A DNA stretch of 58,152 bases, filler included, from Platydemus manokwari (Eukaryota), in the NCBI GenBank assembly GCA_037951405.1. It is 5 parts of 5 records of this genome, joined end to end, with 100 filler letters (N's around TTAATTAATTAA, not from the genome) between each part and the next. Parts side by side here need not be neighbours in the genome. Positions count along the whole stretch, not along the records: positions 1 to 13,680 come from JBBMOY011646958.1; 4 more parts are not named here. One strand, 5' to 3'. Below the pieces are notes generated by a model. It ran no database searches and had not been told where the DNA came from. It worked only from the letters and a program-made list of their open reading frames with translations. A program made the translations under genes and the position numbers. Shown here piece after piece: positions 1 through 13,680 of this stretch. Every line of letters starts with the position of its first letter. Positions within the stretch are counted from its first letter, which is position 1.

Positions 1-1483
1 TGAGTAAAATATAATAATATTTCGATAAGCATAAATGTAAACATACTATTCTGGAATTAGTAAAAATAATAAATTTTTTATATACTTTTTATTATTAAAA
101 AATTCTGTAAGTATAAATAAATTTGACGACCAGTGTACCAACGATTTCAGTACAGTCACGAACCCTTATTGACAAATATTTTTAATTCAGACTTGACCGA
201 ATATAACTTCAAGACACATGGTTGATCATATAAAATGATCAATATATTCACATCATTGAATGAGTAGAATAAAAAGAATGTTCAAAGATCGAAATTAAAC
301 TAGATTTCTCACTTGTATTGACAAATTGAAATAAGAAACATACAAATAAAAACTGATTGGATTAAACTCTACAAAACAATCCGATTATATTAGATGTTTG
401 ATGGTGAATCAGTTTAAATTGGTTTATATTTTAAAGTAAAAATCAATAAATGTAAATTATGGAACAAATTTAATATTACACCTAGAAAATAAAAATTCTT
501 TGTATAAATACGCTAAGTGAAGTAATTGATTTCAATTTGATTAGTGGATTATCAAAAACTGAATAATTTCATTAGATTGACAAATGTTATTAAAAATAAA
601 AATGAATAAAGAAATAATTTTATTCAAATATCGCATAGCAAAGCATTTTGAGAAATAAAAGATAAATCTCAAATTACAGATAATTTCACATAAAATTTGA
701 GAATTAGAATTTCATAGATGCTTGCATATAATTATTATCAATAACAAAGTTGAGAAGGAAACTGCCCTCAAATTTACCTATAGTATCCCTAGCAATAAAA
801 CAGATGAAGCCTTGTATGGATTTTATCAGATAATATATCACAAACAAGACGAAATATATCCACTGGATAATGTTCTCACGTGTGGATCTTAGCGAACACT
901 GGTAGCATGTACAGGATCGCTTATGTGTTACTTATAAAATGTCACGTAGTACCCCAAGTCGGAAAATGCAGGATAGGCGGGGCTTCTGGATCTGCACTCG
1001 AGCAGCTATCATGAACCATTATAAAATATTTTGATTCAATTGGTAATATTTATAGATGACAATTATCTATCGCGTGCTTTATTAATTGTTTTTCTTTATC
1101 CCATCTTTAGTGATTTGATTTAATATATTTAGTTTCATATTGCAGTGAATACAAATAATCCCATCTATTTAACTTATATATTTAACTTTTATTAAAAAAT
1201 TTTATCCCATTGTGCCCTGGAATAATATAATAACATTAAAATAAATGACTTAATCATTGTAGTAATCAAATATAAGAGTATAAGTTTAATCCAATATCCA
1301 TGAAAATGTTTATAATTAATCAAATTGTTCGTTAAGAAAGACGGATTTTAATCACAGGCGAAGAACAAAAAATAAACCAAACTAGATGAAAAATAATCCA
1401 AACAGCAAGAAGCACAATACGAACAAGAAATACGGAACCCAGAATTCAGAGGAAGCAGCTTTTTCAATGAAAACAATATTAAT

Positions 1484-1664
1484 CATTGTGAGCATTTTAA
1501 ATTGAATTAAAATTTTTATAGATCGAATTTTATATAAAATTTAGTTTAATATAAAATTTAATTGTGCATAAATTTTTTTTTATAAATCAAATTTATTTGT
1601 TTAAATAATTGTATTAATAATTAAATATAATTGGATGTCGTGATTTTTCAGTTCGTTTTCAATG
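1484..1664 (+). repeat. Copy 1 (longest) of a GT...TTTTCAGTTCGTTTTC element family
   Basis: Starts CATTGTGAG. Invariant TTTTCAGTTCGTTTTCAAT at 1645-1663. Its first ~60 nt align with copy 3 and its 3' half with copy 2. Confidence 0.85.
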
Positions 1665-4211
1665 AATGATTTTTATGGTTTTTTTTTCAACGAAACACGA
1701 ATGAGTTTATGAGTTGACCTATTGGAATAATATTTAATTGATCTTAAGAATTATTTAAATTAATATTTTTTTCCTTATTTTTTTTAATAACGGTTTCTTT
1801 TGTAGATTGTCTTTACTTTAAAATTATTGCTCTTCATAACTGTATGAAAATATTAATGTTCATTTTTGTATCACAAAAAACTATTTATCATTCATCTAAT
1901 CGTGTTGACATTGTTAGATTCCACCTGCTGTTGTTGTTTATTTTCTTAATCTCTTAGATTTCCAACATTGTTTTCTTCGAATCTCAGTTTTCCATATGTC
2001 TACAATAAAATTTCAAACGTTTTTTTGTTATCAAATATTTTTCGCTTCGTGGAATTTAGCTAATTTATTAGGAGGAAATTTTTTTAACAGTTTCTTCTAC
2101 AGTATTTAATTGGCCTGTCGCTTTCAATTTTCGACTTGATTGATTGAATTATCTTTATTTCTTCAATGTTCACTGGATGATAAATTTTTTCTATTAAATT
2201 ATAATTCTTCTGTTTGTCCGAGAATTAACTGGAAATATCTTAAATAAAATCGAATTTGTTTGTTTTAAAATATTAAAATAATGTATTTAAGATTGTTAAT
2301 ATTGTTTGGTTTTTACCGGGTATTTGAGTTTAGAAGGATTTATATCGTCAAAGTAAAATAGCATTAATATTTATAGTGTGCCTGACTTCAAAGGCTCAGT
2401 AGTAGACACAACGGAAAATAATTTAAATATAAATAAAGGAATGATGATAAATAAAAATATAATTATGAAATCAAATATCGTACAAGTAATAGTCACCAAA
2501 GTATCAATTTACAAATACCAAATAAAACGACGATTGAATAAACGATAATTATTTGATAACAAATAACCATGTTTTTAGTTAAATTTTTAATTAGAGGTTA
2601 TTATTTTGTATATTATTTGAATAGTCCCTTGTGCGGAGAGCTCGAAAGGTTCTCGATTTTTCATCTATGATAGTTGGAACTTATGAAATCCATCTACTAT
2701 ACAGTAAAGAGAATGGAAATTTATTAACTTTAGGTGATTACATGATTAGTAATTCAACACAGTAGTCCAACACACTTTTAAAATAATTGAAAAAATGATT
2801 ATTGTAGAATACATTAAAATAAAGAAATTTTAAATTACTGTGCAGAACGATTGATTTTTGTAAATAAACGCGCTTTTCTCCTTTTGATTTATAATTGGTT
2901 TTATATAGCAGCTTCTGGTTGACATAGTAGTATTGGGGTAGTGAGACAACAATCATAAAATAATAAATTATAGCTTTACTTATAGAATTATAATGACTGG
3001 CGTTATTTATCAACTTTGTCTATAAAAACTGCGGGCGTTTTTTCTGAATAATGCTTTTCTTTTATAGTGATTCTTTTCCTATTTTTTAAGGAATTTTTTT
3101 TATATTTTATTATTAAATCCCCACACATTTTAGTTCTAATTTTAGTAACTTCTAATTATTTTTTTTCGATTATTGGTGTTGATAAATTCCATTTATATAA
3201 TTTCTTTTCGGCATCCACCATTATTTATTACTCTTATTGTTATGACATTAAGAATGTGTGATCAAAATCCAAGTGCAAAATGTCGTGGATTGTAGTCATG
3301 ATATGGAAATTATAAATTTTCTTTCGTCTAAATTTTTATATATCCAAGTATGTAAAAATAAGAAAATATGCTTTTTAAAACAAATATCTACACTTTTGGC
3401 AGCGATAAAGTCAATTGTGAAATAACTATTTGGACAATCGGAAAATGCATCTATAAGCAGTATATTTTTCTAGTGTATCTAATCATTACTGCAACAGTAT
3501 GATCAAATCATTGATAATTGTTGATGTCGATTAGTAGATAAATAATGGAAGCCGGCTTATTAGTGAACTACATATTTGTATTGCCAATCATTATGATAAT
3601 GGAGAGATTTTTATTTTATTTTCCATATTAAAATATAAAATATCAACCGCTAAGGATATGATTTTAAATCACGACAATTTTCAAAAATCAGTAGATGATT
3701 TAATCATCTTGATCTTTCGCAATGAAATTAAATCGTGAATGTTGTTTAAAAATAAATTATATATGTTTGTAAAATATGTTATTGGTTTTTGTTGAGATAT
3801 TTATCCACAATGACATTGAAGTTGATTAATGATAATAGCTCTACTCATTGGATGGGATAATTTATCATTTTAATAAACGAATACTCTATTAAAGTAATAT
3901 AAGTAATCAAAAATCAGAAATCTTTCTGCTATATCGACAATCCCTGATGAGCAGCTTACACAACAGAGACCAGATTTCAAACCATGTATCACTCGATAAA
4001 TTCTCTATTATTCATTGAATGTTGTTTTAATAAAGTCCAATTTGAAGTTTATTTGATTTGATTAATAAAAAATAAGAAATTTTGTCAAACAGACCTGATC
4101 TTTGATGAAGTGAATGCTGAAAAGTAAATAAATGACATAAGACAGAAAATTTAAATACTATTTTATTGTGGAAATTGAATGACAAAATTATACCATTTGT
4201 TGATGAACTAT

Positions 4212-4322
4212 TTGCATTGTGAGAATTTTCAAATCAGATTTTTATAAAGCATTTATTTGTTTGAATAATTGTGATTCAAATATAATTTGAAGTTATGGCT
4301 TTTCAGTTCGTTTTCAATGCAA
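4212..4322 (+). repeat. Copy 2 of the same element family (internally deleted)
   Basis: TTGCATTGTGAG start, invariant 19-mer at 4300-4318, flanks TTGCATTG/CAATGCAA are complementary. Confidence 0.85.
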
Positions 4323-4524
4323 TCTTTATTATAAATAGTAGAGCTAACATCCATTTTAATAAAATATTTACACCACAATGATCAATAGAAACAAAGATGA
4401 TTATTTGTCCTTTTTTTTTAATTATTTGAGATGATTTTATATATTTTCTTTTCACGCTATTATTAGCTCATTATAATTAAACACATAATATTTTATTAAA
4501 CATTATTTCGTTCATGTTATCATG

Positions 4525-4622
4525 ATTGTTATTATTAATATTATTACTATTTTATTATCATTATTATTAATAATTATTATTTTTATTATTTTATTATTAT
4601 TATTATTGTTATCATTATTATA
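4525..4622. repeat. Degenerate (ATT)n microsatellite
   Basis: Visible tandem ATT units with substitutions. Confidence 0.8.
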
Positions 4623-4695
4623 AAGACGAATTAATGATAATGATGTTTATAATAATAGATTAATATCGCTAATATATTATATATTTTTCATTTAG

Positions 4696-7600
4696 AACTT
4701 GAAGATATTCAAACTGAAATTTTGATTCAACTCGTTAAAAGTAATAATTCGATTGACGACGAAGTAATTCGTTTATTTCAAAACAAAAATTATTATTATT
4801 ATTATTATTAAATTATTATTTTTACTCATTTATAATCATAAGAATTGTTTTATTTAATATTTCAATTGAACGACTTAATTATTACATATGATTCTAGTAA
4901 CGATAAGAATAGTGATAAATTAATAAACAATAAAATAAAAATCTGCCAAATAAATGACTAGCCTATATTCAAGTCGATCATATCAGTTGTGATAATCGTC
5001 ATCTCTATGAAGCAACTCTATTTATCGTTATGTCATTGTATTGCCATGATATTATAAATATTTTTATCGAAAACCCGGTTACTTGTGTCATCATTTCTTG
5101 TTTGTATTTGATTAAGTTGATAATATTTATTTTTATTTGTTCTTTCAATAGCATAATTCTTTCTCTTCAATTTCCATAACCATCTGTACGTTCATCAATA
5201 AGTTTTTTCTTGATGATTTCTGTTCAAATATTATCTGTGAATGTATTTTCCTATCTTTGATGGATGTTTACATCAAATTATTGACTTTAATGTTTAATAA
5301 TATTTATTTGTTACGCATTTTTGAATAAATGTCAAATAATTCAAACAAAACGATTCTCAAACAAAATACGTAAGAATGTCTTTATGTTAAACAGTAGATT
5401 AAAACCATAAATGACAATGTTGAGACTGAACAGTTTGATTTGTGAATGAATAATTAATTATATGATTATTTATTAATTATTTCACCAGACCTCAATAATT
5501 TTTAGAAATTATCAAAATGAAGAAAACGACGCCAATCCAATTTATATTAATAATAATATGCTTCATTCCAGCAAATTATTATTTTCAAATCTTGTTTATA
5601 TTCACTGAATAAATTTCAAAAATATTAGCGATATTATTTTTTAGTCGAATATTGTGTTGGAATAATTAGAGGATTAGAAATGGGTTTTTTTAATTTATTC
5701 TGTCGGTTATTCTTTATTCGAGATAATATCGCAAAAACATAATTATTCCTTCATACATTGGTTCTATTAATAATATCGTTGCTGTATATTTGATTTATTA
5801 AATCAGTAGATGATATGTTTGTTTTAATCTCAACATAATACAATTATTATTATTATGATTTTATTAAAATTGTGATTTTTTAGTGTGGAAAATCTTCTTA
5901 AATTCAACATATTTATTAATCAAGTGTAAATAAATAATTTTATATCGCTTGAATTATATTTATCTGTGTAGGAAGCAGTTATTATTAAAAACACTCTTAT
6001 TATGTATCAATTGTCTTGTTTTCTAATATTAGATCGTCGATCTATTTCCATCCATACCTGATGATGTGAAAAGAAATGTTATCAATACTCTATTAATATA
6101 TTAGCCAGTACGTAAATAATTGCAGACATTGCTGTTTACATATTCATTATGAATTCAATCAATAAAATAATATTTTTTAATGAAATTTACAATTTTCAAG
6201 TTCTTTAATATTCATTCTATCAACAGTTGTTAAAATTTTTGATTCCAAATGAAATAAAAACTATTAGAATTCTCTTTGACACATCGCATTTCATAGAATG
6301 TCATTCATTCATATGACAGAATCAAATTTTAAACCAAATAATTGAATATCATATGTTGTCTCTAAAACACCCTGGATACGGACGATTATATTTATTTAAT
6401 AAATTGGTGTTTGTTACGAGTTATCATTTAGATGAATTGAACAGTGAAACTTTTGTTGGTGTGTGTGTGTGTGTGTGTTTAAGCAAAATATATTGTATTG
6501 CATTATACAATATCTGTAAATAATGATTTGTTCTAATAATTTGTATTGTATCATTAATTTGTTCACCTAGACTATGATTTAGTTTAAACAATATGATTAT
6601 GATTATGATTATGATTATGATTATGATTAATCGAATGTTTTCAGGCTGAATTGACTCTAAGAACATTGTTTATCCAACAGTTGTATCGTTACTTGAGAAT
6701 AAACATTAACAATGTAATTAAATCCATTATTGAATCCTATTATTAATTACTTGTAGACAGAAACTGTATCATATTATAGCTCTTCATTAATTATATCATT
6801 TTTCCATCGATTAGTTAACTTGATTCGCTATTTGTGGAAGGAAGCCATGATAAAATTTCCCGATCTTCCAATTTTTGAAGGTGATGTCGATTTCAATACA
6901 AATGATTTTTACAGTCAAGACATCTTTTCCAGACATATCCATACCGGTATCTCTTTATGCTATGCCATCGAGTAATTGTATTCAACTGAACTCATTACGA
7001 ATCAGTGGTCGATTGAATCAGTTGACAAAAACATTCAAAAGCGATCTGGATACTTTATTAAATAAGAATTTTAAAAAATCGGAAAAACGAAAATTTACAG
7101 GTTAGAAATTTTGATTATATGGAAGTCAAAGATTATTATTTTTGTAATTTAATTTGTTTTAATCGATGAAATAAATGATTGACAGTTTAATATTCAATTC
7201 CTTTTTTGTGAACATTGAAAACAGTGAGAAATAATAATTCACAATTAATGAGATGAGTTCTTGGTTTTGTCAGGAGATGATCCGACTTTGTTATATAGCA
7301 TTTTGGAATTATCCAGACGTCAAATGTTATCAATATTAGATTTTTAAGATTGCTTGATGCATACTAAACTGAAAAATATATCCATTCTATTATACCAGGG
7401 GTGGCCAACCGGTCTATCGCGATCGAGTGGTCGATCTTGAAGCCAATTTTAGTCGATGGCGTGAGATGTTATTCAAATGAAAAGTTGATCTTACGTACAC
7501 AAAAGTTGGCTACCTATGTATTATATGACCTAAATTAAGAATATATTTTTAAATGAAATTGTTGCACACACACACATATATATATACTTTATGTTTATGG

Positions 7601-10600
7601 GTTTCGATATCGATATTTGTATTTGATCCGACAATCAAGTCAGACTTTTGTTTATACTGTTTATATCTTTCATTATTTTGTTTATATTATTGAGCTTGTA
7701 ATAAATAATTCAAAATGTAATAGACCAACCGATAAATGATACGGTAATGAAGATATATGATCATAGTGGGCAAATAAATGACTCTGTGAGCCACATGGAA
7801 TTGGTCGTAATCAAGGCAAATGAAGTGATTCCATTGAATATGCCATATAGAAACAAAATTTCAAAAATTTTCATTAACAACGCAAATTTTATGCGATTAA
7901 AATGTTTATTTCATATTTTATTATTAAAGTATTAACAATTACAGTAGATTTTCGATCAACGTTTTATTGTTGTGAATAACATCCAATCATGTGATAAGAT
8001 CTGACACTGCTTAATTCATATTGTCAGAATTTTTAATTGAATTGAATTTTTTAAGATTTAATTTTATATATAATTTTGTGTCGTTTCTTTTCAGTTCGTT
8101 TTCAATTCATATTTTATAAAGTAATAGCGGCTTCTACATATTACATCATATTTATCTGTATCTGTTTTGTTAAACAAATGTATATTGTGGATATTTCTTT
8201 ACGAAATATGAATCAACAACCATATGGCTCTCTTTGATTCATGATTTGTGTTCTGGTTATCAGGCCTACAGATATTTTTGGAAATTCCCATTCCTGAATT
8301 GTATGAATCATTATTTTTGTCTACCTTTTCATTGTGCTATCTCTATAAAAGATATCATTTTATTAATTAAAATATTTATTTTAAATTGCTGTCAAAATTT
8401 CGTTATTCTGAGCTATAACATTGCATTTTTGGAGAAAAGAGGAGATTTTTATTTTATATTTTTTATGAAGAATATTCAATGTTAATAATAATTTAGAATT
8501 TCCGAAATTCTTTCTTGATTCAAAAAATAAAAAGCCAAAAATCCCCAACAAAATTCATGGTAATCATCGTCATTCATTTTTCTAATTCATATTTATCGAT
8601 TTATTTCCCATTTGTAGATATTGTCCTTGAAGAACGAAGTGTTGCAATATCTAATAACCCTTCCAAATCACAATCAGTTTCCAATTGTAAAATATCATCA
8701 TCACCATTAAAGGAAAATTCCACAACTTCAGAACTCATGACGTCGACAAGTTTTTTTAGTTTATTTCCTACTCATATTCGGGTTGAACCACTGTCTTTAT
8801 TTACTGGATTGAATCGATCTAACAATACCACAGATACTAGTGTTTCTAGTGATGAAAATATTTTTAGTTGCCAGTTGGAATTTGTACTTGGTGATCTTAC
8901 CAGTTGTCTTCAGTTGGTTGAAGCAGCAGATGTATTTTATTATATCAGTGCCAATGAACATCTGAACAAGGTAAAGAATATATATTTTTTTCAAATAGCT
9001 AATATATCATTTGAAATTTTTGTAGCTTTAAATGTAGTTTTTCATCTGGGATTTATTATAAAAATTTACATTTTCCTTTGCAATTTTTCATTAATTTGTA
9101 AACAAATCTAGTGAGTTGACTTATGGTCATGGCAATCATAAAACAATTTACTGAACAAGATTTTCATTGCTCAATTTTTGCTTATGATCTCACACACACA
9201 CATACACACACAATCTTCTAGAGTCTAGTAACTAGACTGTGAATGAATTATGAATATTAGTGGTGCAGATAATTCAATTATCGGAGTAGAAGTGTTTGTA
9301 GAATGGCATAAATCTTTCGAATTGGATTTTGAAATAATATTTGATCATTTGGGAGAATGAATTTAGATTGTTTTTTATATGGATAAAATGTCGATGCAAT
9401 CTCACTTGTTACATGATTTTCATTTCATATTTATACCGTGCAGATTCTCATAATATTTTAGCTTTAAAAGCTATTCAAGTTTTAAATGGCTTAGTTAATG
9501 AGCTAAATAATTGTGAGCTCTTTACGAGAATCTATATTTATCGATGATGTTTAATTTTATTTTTTGTTTATTGTGATTTTTTATAAAGTAAAATTTTTCT
9601 AATTTGACATGAAAAATTGAATCTAAAAATCATTGAAAAATTATCATTTTTGATTAGGATATAACAACATTTTGTTTATTCTATCATAAGCCTATCAACC
9701 AATTTGGAGATTCTTCATATTTTATTGGAAAATTAAATGCGTCAAACAAAATGATTGAAGAATTCTTGATTTAAAATAATACCAAAATTTGGTCAAATGA
9801 CAAAAATCGAATGAGAATTGGAATTAAAATTATTATATAATGTAGTTTAATAATTAGGAAATAACAATAGGAGAAATAATAATTTGAAAGCTGTAAATAT
9901 TGGAACAATAGAAACAGAAATAAATCATTATTGAGATAGATAATAATCATATATTTGAGCTTGAGAAATGAAGCTTGATGAATCCAATTACCATTATAAC
10001 ATAGTGTTGACAATTTGGAGGATCTTGTAAAGATTCTGCCCTCCAATAAAAATAATTAAAAAAATAAAAATAAATAATTTTTATTGATGAAAATCTCTTA
10101 ATTCCTTCTTAGTCCACACCATTTGTTGATGATAATGAGAACACAGCATCATTGATTTTAAAATACCTTTTGATTTAACAAATAAAATCAAATCGGTAAC
10201 ATCTGTATTTAAAAGGCGCCTTACCGTCTGTTCATAAAAAGTACCTGCACAGGCAAAATTTATTTCAAATAATTAAAAAATTTTAAAATAAATAATAATA
10301 AAAATGTAAATCAATTTAATAAATTATTCTATTAAATTTTTATTATAAGGTGTGATTTTATTTCCTTTTAAAATTACACTTGTAAAAGTCCAGCCCCTAT
10401 GGTGTAGAATTTACAGGAACCAGTTCTGAATATTGCAGAACATCCAATGGTAAAACAACATATTACTACTTTATCATTTCCACTATTAATGTTAGTCACT
10501 TCTTTGACTTCAAAATCTTTTAGACTCATGTTTGTTAACAGATATTATAATTTAAGAATAAAGCCTACATTGTTAAAACATAGAATGTCCCTATGACACC

Positions 10601-13356
10601 GTTAAACTTGATTGTAATTAGTTTTATAGCATTAAATTTTATTGAAATTTCTTCGTTTCAGTATCATATTATATAAATATAATAATGGATGAAATTAGAA
10701 ATAGATCATTGGATCGGTTTTCTTAGCCTAAATAGAAATATGATAAATGGATTTTGACACTACTAGATTTGATTTATTGCTGGCCATTTAATATAATCAA
10801 CTCTTTTATAAAACCATTTGAAATTTTAATGTTAAATTTGGTTTTTATTTTATCTCTTTTCATAATTCTCTCATATTTCCTTTATTTTTAACAATTGACT
10901 AACCTCGTTTGTTTATTACAGAAATTTTTCTGAATAATTTTTCAGTCATTTCTAATCATGTAAATGTTCTTTAATCGTATTATATTTTCTAGATAGTAGC
11001 TTTGAGAAATCAAGCACACAGCTACATTGTTGCTATTCAAGACATCGATGATCGGATTAAACGATGTCCCAATGAAGTTGTTTTTCGTTGTCATAGACAT
11101 TATATGTTTGTTTATATTTTCTTATGTTTAGGAAAAACATATTAAATATTTATTGCGAAATTCTTTGAGAATGTTTGAGGAAAAATTGACAAATCTCAGT
11201 CGAAGTTTGGCTTTCATCAGAGCAACAACATTTTCTGAGGTGATTATTTCTGTTGATTAATATGATCAAGATTTATGAGCGTGAATATTTGTGAATATTT
11301 TGTTACAAAATTTTCCATTTCTGCTTTTTTTATTTTAATGTCGATTGATAAATGCTTTACAATTGATTTTCATTCTTAATTTAGATGATTATTAATATTG
11401 GGGTCAAGTTTTACTTTGGTTGACTGATTTTGGGAATCAATGATTTGGAAAAATAATTATTTGAATCTGGCACTTACTCGTATTTATTTCATTTTTTTCA
11501 AATCTTTTTTAATTTTTTTAAATATATCTGTCATTCTAATTATCTTCAAATAAAGAATAAAATCATTCCTACGTTAACATTTATGTTGGAATATCGCCAT
11601 TTTTTTCAAAGCTCATGGAGTTGCCACACATTTTGGTTTGGAAATAATATAAATCCAATGCTCTATACTCGATACAAAATTGTTAGAAACAAAGTCATTC
11701 CGTTAGGCTGTTGTAAGCGAGGAACTTTTTTCATTTCATCTAATTCGAACAAGTGTATTCTGATTTCTTCTTAATGGAACTCGTTGATCTTTAAAGCTAA
11801 TAAATTTTCATAGAATATTTCAGAGGAAGTGAAGAAGTTGTAATTTTTTTAAGCAAATATTTGTGCGATAAAAAATGTTTTTCTGCTATTTTTTTATCCA
11901 TGAAGCTTTTCCGAGATCAAGATTAATCGACGAAAGCCTCTTACTTGAAAGTGATTGTTTAGTCATAGTAATAATTCTTAAATCTTGACGAATTATCTCG
12001 TTAAAATCACCTCTAGGTTTCCAATAAAAATATACTTATCATTCTTTTTTATCATATTAAAAAATAGGAATATTCTAATGCATCGTGATTTGTTATTGTT
12101 ATAATAATACATGGAGTTCATTAAAACATACTTGTTGGAAACAAATGAATTGTTTGATTGATGTTAATTGAATCGCATCTGTGCTGAATATCATTCATTA
12201 TACCATGAAGATCTACAAGAGCTTTACATACGTTATTAATACAAAATACATCATATTCAGTATTCCTTAAAGGTACTTTTGTGTGATTTTATTTGTGGTG
12301 TTATTAACACTTGAAAAGTATAATTTGTATTCCACATTGAAATCGTACTTTTTTACGTGAGATCTTGCGAAACATCTATACCACTTCTGTTAAAATATTG
12401 TGTTATATATAGGTTTTAATATCGTTTATGATTTATATGCATCTTCATTTATTGTACGTTTATTTAATACTTATTAGCTGTTTATATCTATAACTTAATT
12501 ATATTGTTCGGTGATGTCTTTTTTTTTATTTTATATTTGTAATCCTTACTACATTCCTGGTTTTTTTAATAATTGTAAAATTATGAATTTGCTTTCAGGA
12601 AAAACGGGATGATATTCTTTGGTTATGGACAACAACATTAGCTACTCTGGATGAAAATAAAAACGATAAATTGTATGGTTTTTTGCCCACATATCATATT
12701 GAAAATTGTCTCAATATATTTCGGCATATTACCGCAATATATCATCCAACTTTACAACTGGAAGGATTGAGAGGTGTGATCATTATTATTTATTCAAATA
12801 TCATCATTATTTTTCTTTTTTTTAATTTGGTTTTTGTTTCTCTGAAAACAATAGAATATCAATTCTTTCACTGCGACTATGGAGATATTTAAGTAGACAA
12901 CAATCTATAATATTGAATTATCATGTCTTATTTGGTGTATTTTATATTATTTAATACTTACTACTAGATTGTTTCAATGTTTTGGGACAACATGGTATTA
13001 TGGTCATGTTCAACTATCGAGATAAGAGAATTACTCAATCTAATTTACGAAATCAAATGATGAAGGGAATAGTGGATGTTATCAATTTACCAATAGCTAT
13101 GAAATGCCTTGAAGAACGTATTAGTCCAGCCGATGCTACCAATTTTTTACAATCACTTCTTACCGATTGGGCAGATGCTATGATTATTTTAGAGAAATTT
13201 TGGAGAGTAATTCTTTAATGACAATATTAGAATCTTTATATTTCCAATAATCCAATTTATTATAGGGCGATGGATTTGCGTTTAGATATCAAGAATTGCC
13301 TCATCAACAATTGCCAGAGTTTCATTTGCGAGATGCTGTAGTGAAATCATTTGAAA
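4696..13356 (+). CDS. RNF123: E3 ubiquitin ligase RNF123/KPC1 orthologue, internal part (5' exons unresolved, 3' end cut by gap)
   Basis: Phase-consistent GT-AG exons 4696-4763, 6645-6713, 6757-6880, 6933-7100, 8618-8970, 10993-11076, 11132-11239, 12599-12773, 12968-13206, 13266-~13356. They translate to ELEDIQTEILIQL, FFHRLVNLIRYLW, RISGRLNQLTKTFKSDL, IQDIDDRIKRCP, FEEKLTNLSRSLAFIRATTFSEEK and FWRGDGFAFRYQELPH. These are collinear with recalled human RNF123 motifs [75 protein letters not shown] and LWRGCGFGYRYTRLPH. Confidence 0.88.
6458..6629. repeat. (GT)n tract and (ATTATG)n tract in an RNF123 intron
   Basis: GT run at ~6458-6478 and ATGATT hexamer run at ~6592-6629. They generate the spurious poly-Ile ORF 6424-6666. 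Confidence 0.85.
7396..7518. mobile_element. Non-autonomous hAT-type MITE (123 bp)
   Basis: Terminal inverted repeats CAGGGGTGGCCAAC / GTTGGCTACCTATG (11/14 match). 8-bp target duplication TATTATAC / TATTATAT. Confidence 0.85.
8013..8113 (+). repeat. Copy 3 of the same element family, with 10-bp direct flanking repeat
   Basis: ATTGTCAG start, invariant 19-mer at 8088-8106, AATTCATATT at both 8013-8022 and 8104-8113. Confidence 0.85.
10109..10529 (-). CDS. Possible small nested antisense gene (~75 aa), weak FUN14/FUNDC-like resemblance
   Basis: AACAAACATG start. Putative exons 10529-10380, 10244-10225 and 10166-10109 with GT/AG ends give MSLKDFEVKEVTN...IGAGLLQ|VLFMNR|RYFKIND...VD*. Confidence 0.3.
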
Positions 13357-13680
13357 GTAATTTTAATAATGATGAAGTTTTTATTTTCATGTCGTATAAT
13401 AATTTTTAATATAAATAGAAAATTGACGTTTATTATTATTATTTATAAATTTGTGCGTTATTTGATAATAATGTATTAATCTGACATTGAACTATATATA
13501 TATATATATACATGTATACATATATATTATAGGGAGACTAAATTTTATGAGATTAAACATCCTATATAGACATATCATATAATTTGATTGTTTTGCAGTT
13601 ATAAATGAACCAATTAGTATATTTTAGAAAGTGGAATTCTAGAATTCAAGAATATTGTTATAGACTGGCACATGGTCATT

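What the first reader, a model, noticed from the sequence alone, without database searches (positions are those of the whole stretch)
1478..8113. Family of three intron-shaped elements (GT...TTTTCAG plus invariant tail) confined to the RNF123 contig
Seen: three homologous elements (1484-1664, 4212-4322, 8020-8106), all in the sense orientation of RNF123. I found no copy in the other 44 kb. Each starts ATT|GT(G/C)AG and ends with the identical 19-mer TTTTCAG|TTCGTTTTCAAT. The AT-rich interiors differ by large deletions, giving GT-AG spans of 164, 88 and 72 nt. Copy 3 has a perfect 10-bp flanking direct repeat, and copy 1 has an 8/10 one (ATTAATCATT/ATGAATGATT). There are no good TIRs. Known: Mutator-like elements have G...C ends and 9-11 bp duplications, and introner elements are transposons carrying splice sites. 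Inference: a small non-TIR mobile element that the spliceosome could largely excise, leaving 9 nt plus the duplication. That would make it an introner or nested-intron candidate. Alternatively it is an intron-hosted structured RNA family.
Basis: partly seen in the sequence, partly recalled or inferred. Interest (0 to 1): 0.75.

Follow-up and report, generated by a model that had tools for sequence, protein, structure and literature searches.

The report
Solo LTRs of a miniature retrotransposon
The three "intron-shaped" elements are leftover single terminal repeats (solo LTRs) of a tiny non-coding LTR retrotransposon, a TRIM, that has thousands of copies across this genome; this is an ordinary repeat, not a new kind of intron.

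Summary
The identical 19-mer occurs three times on the + strand (1645, 4300, 8088). However, it is found at 4,144 places in the 911-Mb genome.

Alignment of about 60 other copies shows that homology continues about 30 nt beyond the 19-mer. The unit is about 150-175 bp and runs from TGTGAG to GGCTTACA, that is, TG...CA ends.

About a quarter of the copies are followed directly by a conserved block that starts TGG and looks like a primer-binding site. After it come 190-250 bp of non-coding, purine-rich sequence, a polypurine tract (AAAGAAAGGGGGA) and a second copy of the unit. Whole elements measure 503-555 bp and carry 5-bp target-site duplications.

This is the architecture of a terminal-repeat retrotransposon in miniature (TRIM). 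The window holds three old solo LTRs:
- 1487-1675, truncated at its 3' end
- 4218-4349, TSD TGCAT/TCCAT
- 8022-8138, TSD CATAT/CATAT

No Rfam family matched and no fold signal was found. No RNA run was available, so splicing was not tested. The primer tRNA, the autonomous partner and the RNF123 identity of the host gene were not confirmed. This is a new member of a known kind, of low interest.

The parts
1487..1675 (+). Copy 1: a solo LTR that starts TGTGAG and is truncated at its 3' end. It covers profile positions 1-152 of 170, so the last ~18 nt including GGCTTACA are missing. The U3-like AT-rich part is lengthened by tandem duplications at 1528-1560 and 1570-1606.
   Evidence: (85% identity to the family consensus over matched columns).
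4218..4349 (+). Copy 2: a solo LTR running from TGTGAG to GCTAACA, with deletions in the AT-rich 5' part. It is flanked by a 5-bp target-site duplication, TGCAT (4213-4217) / TCCAT (4350-4354), which matches at 4 of 5 positions.
   Evidence: (81% identity to the consensus).
8022..8138 (+). Copy 3: a solo LTR running from TGTCAG to GGCTTCTACA, with a large deletion in the AT-rich 5' part. CATAT (8017-8021) repeats as CATAT (8137-8141) if the LTR ends at 8136.
   Evidence: 88% identity to the consensus.
1645..1663 (+). The 19-mer in copy 1. It falls in the most conserved block of the LTR (profile positions about 122-140). It contains TCAGTT, which lies about 26 nt downstream of a TATATAA-like motif. 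This may be the core promoter and the start of R, but that is inference only.
4300..4318 (+). The same 19-mer in copy 2.
8088..8106 (+). The same 19-mer in copy 3.
12599..13356 (+). Context only: three putative + strand exons (about 12599-12773, 12968-13206, 13266-13356) separated by GT...AG introns of about 190 and 59 nt. They show that a + strand gene lies at this end of the contig. Its identity as RNF123 was not confirmed.
   Evidence: Read from the sequence. No Pfam hit, no credible homologue by HMMER, none in the PDB.

Best explanation
The three elements are solo LTRs of a high-copy, non-autonomous LTR retrotransposon of the TRIM type (terminal-repeat retrotransposon in miniature).

A complete element is about 500-555 bp. 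Its parts, in order:
- an LTR of about 150-175 bp that begins TGTGAG and ends GGCTTACA;
- a conserved block of about 30 nt that starts TGGTGACCACGCAT and sits where a tRNA primer-binding site belongs;
- 190-250 bp of non-coding, purine-rich sequence built of GAAGATATAAAG-like repeats;
- a polypurine tract (AAAGAAAGGGGGA);
- the second LTR.

Inferred mechanism, following the standard LTR-retrotransposon cycle: the element is transcribed from its 5' LTR and packaged by the Gag/Pol of an unidentified autonomous element. Reverse transcription is primed at the PBS and the PPT. An integrase that makes 5-bp staggered cuts then inserts the copy. Later recombination between the two LTRs leaves a single LTR flanked by the duplication.

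The three window copies are such relics. They are old (81-88% identical to the family consensus), one is truncated, and they lie in the non-coding part of a contig that carries a + strand gene. The 'intron shape' is incidental. GT is bases 2-3 of the LTR's terminal TGTGAG. TTTTCAG belongs to the LTR's best-conserved block, which probably holds the transcription start (TCAGTT about 26 nt after a TATA-like motif) and the R region.
For: - **Copy number.** There are 4,144 places for the 19-mer and 1,152 places for the LTR-end/PBS junction GGCTTACATGGTGACCACG with at most 2 mismatches.
- **True ends.** Thirty copies picked by the 19-mer share about 30 further nt on the 3' side and the TGTGAG start. 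A 170-position LTR profile built from 22 copies finds 101 LTRs in 60 loci.
- **Complete elements.** The LTR-PBS-internal-PPT-LTR layout is seen in L016 and in L046-L065. Six measured elements are 503-555 bp long, with internal regions of 192-248 bp and LTR-LTR identity of 82-87%.
- **Polypurine tract.** It lies directly 5' of TGTGAG in 3' LTRs.
- **5-bp TSD.** At the profile-defined ends, 6 of 16 elements match at 4 or more of 5 positions, against 9.6% for mismatched flank pairs (P=0.003). Three of 16 match perfectly, against 2.1%. Examples are AAAAC (L065), ATTAT (L044), TTGAC (L007) and GACCG (L053).
- **Solo fraction.** Of 30 LTRs picked by the 19-mer, 9 are followed by the PBS block, 2 of them also with internal sequence in front. 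Five have internal sequence or the PPT in front only. Sixteen have neither, 5 of these near contig edges. So about half are solo or truncated.
- **Tandem form.** LTR-internal-LTR-internal occurs in L043, as described for other TRIMs (PMC6934838).
- **Window copies.** All three align to the LTR profile only, and no internal region is present in the window.
Against: - The tRNA that would prime at TGGTGACCACG was not found. Patterns for a tRNA 3' end ...CGTGGTCA hit only a tRNA-like SINE. None of the 34 tRNAs recovered matches more than 5 terminal nt. That search scored only 64 of about 78,000 candidates.
- No coding partner with the same LTR or PBS was seen.
- LTRs within one element differ by 13-18%, so no recent activity is shown.
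- U3/R/U5, the TATA motif and the start site are inferred from motifs only.
Confidence: 0.9

Rival explanations
1. Introner-like element or nested intron. On this reading, a transposon carries its own splice sites, so that sense-oriented copies are removed by the spliceosome from the host pre-mRNA.
For: - GTGAG or GTCAG lies at bases 2-6 of every window copy, and TTTTCAG lies 72-164 nt downstream.
- Real acceptors in this contig look similar, for example TTTCAG at 12593-12598 and TTATAG at 13260-13265.
- All three copies lie in the same orientation as the + strand gene at the contig's end.
Against: - The splice-like motifs do not mark the element's ends. About 45 nt of LTR lie beyond the AG.
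- The family has an LTR/PBS/PPT/TSD layout.
- If the element's own RNA lost GT...AG by splicing, it would lose most of U3 in the 3' LTR and could not regenerate a promoter. Efficient splicing would therefore be selected against (inference).
- Three of three in one orientation has P=0.125 for sense under no bias.
- No copy was shown inside a coding exon.
- No RNA run was available.
Confidence: 0.04
2. A MITE or other non-autonomous DNA transposon, or a SINE.
For: The element is small, AT-rich, high in copy number, and shows short duplications at its ends.
Against: - There are no TIRs beyond TGT...ACA.
- Copies occur as direct-repeat pairs around a PBS-like block and a polypurine tract.
- There is no poly(A) or simple-repeat tail.
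- No tRNA, 5S or 7SL match was found in Rfam at E<=1.
Confidence: 0.02
3. An intron-hosted structured RNA family, with the 19-mer as a conserved RNA motif.
For: The 19-mer is invariant in the three window copies, and it lies in the best-conserved block of the family.
Against: - There was no Rfam match on either strand of the window or of four full elements.
- Minimum free energies are no better than shuffles, with z from -0.80 to +0.78 for four LTRs.
- The conservation is explained by the LTR's promoter and R function.
Confidence: 0.01

Closest known systems
PbTRIM of the harvester ant Pogonomyrmex barbatus (PMC3532108)
   Same: It is an animal TRIM of 480-781 bp with LTRs of 152-184 bp. It has a non-coding internal domain, a PBS directly after the 5' LTR and a PPT before the 3' LTR. 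It has more solo LTRs than complete elements, inserts into AT-rich sequence, forms clusters, and often lies in or near genes and introns.
   Different: PbTRIM makes 4-bp TSDs (mostly ATAT) and has a PBS matching tRNA-Leu. Here the TSD is 5 bp, and the PBS-like block (TGGTGACCACG...) has no identified tRNA. Copy number here is roughly ten times higher or more. Sequence similarity between the two was not tested.
ta-TRIM of taeniid cestodes (PMC4558846)
   Same: It has a TRIM layout, many solo LTRs flanked by TSDs, and tandem LTR-internal-LTR arrays. Its TSDs are 4 or 5 bp depending on species. Its solo LTRs can start transcripts, which are then cis-spliced to downstream exons from a chance GT in the LTR.
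   Different: ta-TRIM has a candidate autonomous partner (lennie) and massive expression shown by ESTs and RNA-seq. Here no partner and no expression data are available.
Plant TRIMs and bivalve biv-TRIM (definition in PMC6934838; plant survey in PMC4717578)
   Same: The definition fits: total length under 1,000 bp, terminal direct repeats of 100-250 bp, an internal domain that starts with a PBS and ends with a PPT. Solo repeats and tandem arrays occur, and the autonomous partner is often unknown.
   Different: Plant TRIMs use a tRNA-Met PBS, and biv-TRIM lacks a typical PBS. The family here has a conserved block of about 30 nt starting TGG.
Introners (PMC9860276, PMC12130899)
   Same: Both are mobile elements with many copies that carry GT and AG motifs.
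   Different: Introners are recognised as near-identical introns inside the coding sequence of many genes, with element ends at or next to the splice sites. Here the motifs are internal to an LTR, and no copy was shown to act as an intron.

Membership tests
TRIM / LTR retrotransposon | Two terminal direct repeats of about 100-250 bp | tested here: met
   Paired LTRs of 136-169 bp occur in L049, L058, L060, L062, L063 and L065. L016 shows the same.
TRIM / LTR retrotransposon | Total length under 1 kb with a short internal domain that encodes no protein | tested here: met
   Elements are 503-555 bp with an internal domain of 192-248 bp made of purine-rich short repeats. That is too short for gag or pol.
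TRIM / LTR retrotransposon | LTR ends TG...CA | tested here: met
   The profile consensus starts TGTGAG and ends CTTACA.
TRIM / LTR retrotransposon | A primer-binding site directly 3' of the 5' LTR, complementary to the 3' end of a tRNA | tested here: inconclusive
   A conserved block starting TGG abuts the LTR's CA in 1,152 places. No matching tRNA gene was found, but the tRNA survey was very incomplete.
TRIM / LTR retrotransposon | A polypurine tract directly 5' of the 3' LTR | tested here: met
   AAAGAAAGGGGGA-like tracts abut TGTGAG in L015, L021, L025, L046-L065 and others.
TRIM / LTR retrotransposon | A target-site duplication of 4-6 bp flanking complete elements and solo LTRs | tested here: met
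   The TSD is 5 bp. Six of 16 elements match at 4 or more of 5 positions, against 9.6% in controls (P=0.003). In the window, copy 2 matches 4 of 5 and copy 3 matches 5 of 5 with the end at 8136.
TRIM / LTR retrotransposon | An autonomous partner sharing LTR ends, PBS and TSD length | not tested
   All 38 PBS-bearing copies inspected carry the same non-coding internal region. No systematic search was possible.
Introner | Element ends coincide with, or create, the splice sites, so that splicing removes the insertion | tested here: not met
   The GT is base 2 of the LTR. The AG lies about 45 nt before the LTR's 3' end.
Introner | Copies are spliced introns inside the coding sequence of many unrelated genes | not testable with these tools
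   No RNA run is available, and there is no gene annotation for this genome.
MITE | Terminal inverted repeats | tested here: not met
   Only TGT...ACA is shared between the ends.
SINE; Cassandra-, retrozyme- or Helenus-type LTR elements derived from small RNA genes | A tRNA, 5S or 7SL-derived part, or a hammerhead ribozyme | tested here: not met
   Rfam gave no match at E<=1 in the window or in four full elements.

The most novel reading that the evidence does not exclude
Sense-oriented solo LTRs of this TRIM may be used by the host's RNA machinery in either of two ways. They could act as cryptic nested introns or exon fragments, using the LTR's GTGAG and TTTTCAG. Or they could act as intragenic promoters that start at the TCAGTT in the 19-mer and splice into downstream exons, as shown for ta-TRIM solo LTRs. 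With several thousand copies, this would be a genome-wide source of alternative transcripts in an animal lineage where few TRIMs are described.
Probability: 0.05. Interest if true: 0.55.

Novelty: new member of a known kind. Interest (0 to 1): 0.18.

Why it matters
It removes an apparent introner candidate. The shape that looked like an intron is a by-product of LTR ends and a conserved LTR core.

What remains is a useful annotation. The family is a very abundant TRIM, with at least 4,000 LTRs and about 1,100 LTR/PBS junctions, in an AT-rich 911-Mb genome. TRIMs have been described in only a handful of animal groups (ants, taeniid cestodes, bivalves). The family could serve as a marker, and as a test case for how solo LTRs in introns affect host transcripts. 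It does not change any concept.

Tried and rejected
- **RNA evidence.** The only run holding the locus is not on record as RNA and is kept as contigs. Read laying was therefore not used, since it could not show splicing.
- **Primer tRNA.**
  - Patterns for a T-arm plus ...CGTGGTCA or ...GTGGTCA found only copies of a tRNA-like SINE, and ARAGORN calls none of them a tRNA.
  - An acceptor-stem pattern gave 2 chance hits.
  - The Rfam tRNA model on the genome returned 53 matches. The 34 tRNAs that ARAGORN called in the 30 fetched loci match the PBS complement in at most 5 terminal nt.
- **Host gene identity.**
  - Twenty ORFs on both strands gave no Pfam hit.
  - Three exon translations gave nothing in the PDB.
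  - The protein atlas gave only scores below 0.8.
  - The full HMMER search of the exon at 12955-13215 gave 3 weak hits. Pfam shows they are not RNF123-like: repetitive DUF7507/DUF11 domains in the best, and weak Pribosyltran or YscX hits in the others.
  - RNF123 is therefore unverified.
- **Joined exons.** The putative exons were searched one at a time by reference.
- **Structured RNA.** No support was found.
- **MITE and SINE readings.** Both are rejected on structure.
- **Internal TRIM sequence in the window.** Only 23-30-nt chance matches were found.
Full report
**1. Observation**

The 19-mer TTTTCAGTTCGTTTTCAAT occurs exactly three times in the window, all on the + strand, at 1645, 4300 and 8088. 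Dinucleotide-preserving shuffles give 0.02 expected, and none of 200 reached three. The GT-to-AG spans of 164, 88 and 72 nt are correct. A three-way alignment confirms homology with large length differences in the AT-rich interior. The whole piece is very AT-rich, at 18-31% G+C.

**2. Not confined to the contig**

In the window's own genome (911 Mb in about 2 million contigs), the 19-mer with at most one mismatch has 4,144 places. The reversed control has 2.

Three exact copies in 13.7 kb is a cluster: 0.06 expected, P about 4e-5. But about 2.6 such windows are expected by chance in a genome of this size. The three copies have unrelated flanks, so they look like independent insertions.

**3. 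True boundaries**

I lined up 30 other copies on the 19-mer. Homology runs on for about 30 nt and ends at ...AGCGGCTTACA. On the 5' side it starts at TGTGAG. A profile built from 22 clean copies has 170 positions and finds 101 LTR matches in 60 loci, but only the three known ones in the window.

They lie inside the element and cannot be target-site duplications.

**4. What follows and precedes the unit**

In a third of the copies picked by the 19-mer, the terminal CA is followed at once by a conserved block that starts TGGTGACCACGCAT and continues for about 17 more conserved bases (see for example L058:986-1016). The junction GGCTTACATGGTGACCACG with at most 2 mismatches has 1,152 places in the genome, against 2 for the control.

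Other copies are preceded by a purine run (AAAGAAAGGGGGA or similar) that abuts TGTGAG.

In L016 and in eleven loci picked by the junction, a second copy of the unit lies 190-250 bp downstream. The layout is: unit, TGG-block, non-coding purine-rich sequence of GAAGATATAAAG-like repeats, purine tract, unit. All 38 inspected copies with the TGG-block carry this same internal sequence. A few are cut by other insertions or by contig ends. Six elements with complete repeats measure 503-555 bp. Their two repeats are 82-87% identical.

**5. Target-site duplication**

With ends set by the profile alone, the 5 nt before the first TG were compared with the 5 nt after the last CA.
- Six of 16 elements agree at 4 or more positions. 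When 5' and 3' flanks of different elements are paired, 9.6% do so (binomial P=0.003).
- Three of 16 agree at all five positions, against 2.1% (P=0.004).
- Allowing 2 nt of slack at each end, six of 16 are perfect, against 7.1% (P=0.0005).

Examples are AAAAC in L065, ATTAT in L044, TTGAC in L007, and GACCG in L053.

In the window:
- Copy 2 has TGCAT / TCCAT.
- Copy 3 has CATAT / CATAT if its LTR ends at 8136.
- Copy 1 lacks its last ~18 nt, so it has no readable 3' flank.

**6. Interpretation**

The family shows four features together:
- TG...CA direct repeats of about 150-175 bp
- a block starting TGG directly after the 5' repeat
- a polypurine tract directly before the 3' repeat
- a 5-bp duplication

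These define an LTR retrotransposon. A total length near 0.5 kb without coding capacity makes it a TRIM as defined in the literature: under 1,000 bp, repeats of 100-250 bp, and an internal domain that starts with a PBS and ends with a PPT (PMC6934838).

About half of the LTRs picked by the 19-mer have neither the TGG-block behind nor internal sequence in front. These are solo or truncated LTRs, the usual product of recombination between the two LTRs. A tandem LTR-internal-LTR-internal form occurs in L043, as in other TRIMs. The window contains only LTR sequence and no internal domain. The three elements are therefore solo LTRs, 81-88% identical to the consensus. They are old.

**7. Why it looks like an intron**

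GT is bases 2-3 of TGTGAG. TTTTCAG lies in the best-conserved stretch of the LTR. In LTRs picked independently of the 19-mer, positions 121-140 agree with the consensus in 82-87% of copies on average, against about 50% in the first 60 positions.

The 5' part is AT-rich and varies in length. Copy 1 carries tandem duplications there. This fits a U3 region.

The 19-mer contains TCAGTT about 26 nt downstream of a TATATAA-like motif, which is the spacing of a TATA box and an initiator. A TATAAA-like motif follows about 25 nt later. I read the block as the core promoter plus R. This is inference from motifs, not shown.

If the element's own RNA were spliced from GTGAG to TTTTCAG, it would lose most of the U3 in its 3' LTR, which argues against efficient splicing (inference).

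**8. Rivals**

- Structured RNA: no Rfam family matches at E<=1 in the window or in four full elements. This also excludes hammerhead, 5S and tRNA-type LTR elements. Folding energies of four LTRs are no better than shuffles.
- MITE: there are no TIRs.
- SINE: there is no tail and no part derived from a small RNA gene.
- Introner: the ends do not coincide with the splice-like motifs, and no RNA data exist to test use of those motifs.

**9. What stayed open**

- The primer tRNA was not found. The searches that should have caught a tRNA ending ...GTGGTCA caught a tRNA-like SINE instead.
- No autonomous partner was seen.
- The host gene could not be confirmed as RNF123. The sequence shows + strand exons with GT-AG introns at 12.6-13.4 kb. 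But 20 ORFs have no Pfam hit, and the full HMMER search of one exon returned only spurious matches.
- Whether 1.4-8.2 kb is intronic, and whether the LTRs are 'sense', rests only on the strand of those downstream exons.

**10. Comparison and verdict**

The closest described families are:
- PbTRIM of ants: same size class, many solo LTRs, AT-rich targets, in or near genes, but 4-bp TSDs and a tRNA-Leu PBS (PMC3532108).
- ta-TRIM of taeniid cestodes: solo LTRs and tandem arrays, 4- or 5-bp TSDs, and solo LTRs that start spliced transcripts (PMC4558846).

This is a new member of a known kind. The finding is ordinary, and its interest is low.

Noticed in passing
L031-L034 and L067-L095 (contigs of about 260-270 bp in the same assembly): This looks like a tRNA-like SINE family. 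A T-arm-like GGTTCGAATCCCTTTGTGGTCA is followed by TTATAGCTTTGAA..., with roughly 300 places for the pattern against 28 for the control. ARAGORN calls none of them a tRNA. These contigs look richer in G+C than the window. The acceptor-like end differs by one base from the complement of the TRIM's PBS-like block.
   Followed up: partly
L058:986-1016 and the same place in other full copies: The conserved block after the 5' LTR is about 30 nt long, which is longer than a usual 18-nt PBS. It contains GGATTCGA, which resembles the complement of a tRNA T-loop. Whether it reflects extended tRNA pairing or a packaging signal is unknown.
   Followed up: no
L009 (second LTR) and L020: In these variant copies, the purine-rich internal repeats run straight into the conserved LTR core (TGTCGTGAC plus the 19-mer) without the AT-rich 5' part of the LTR. 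They may be recombinant or deleted forms.
   Followed up: no
L048, about 55 nt after the PBS-like block: The TRIM internal region is interrupted by unrelated, more G+C-rich sequence. This is probably a nested insertion of another element.
   Followed up: no
window 4517-4621, 6592-6629, 13493-13531: Microsatellites: (TTA) x35, (TATGAT) x6 and (TA) x20. Short (GT)n / (CA)n runs are also visible in ORF translations near 6480 and 7560.
   Followed up: no
window 12955-13215 (+): This is a well-formed putative exon of 87 codons. It has no credible homologue among 1.84 billion representative proteins (best E=2.4e-6, to a repetitive protein of DUF7507/DUF11 domains). So either the gene evolves fast or the RNF123 label rests on another part of the contig.
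   Followed up: partly
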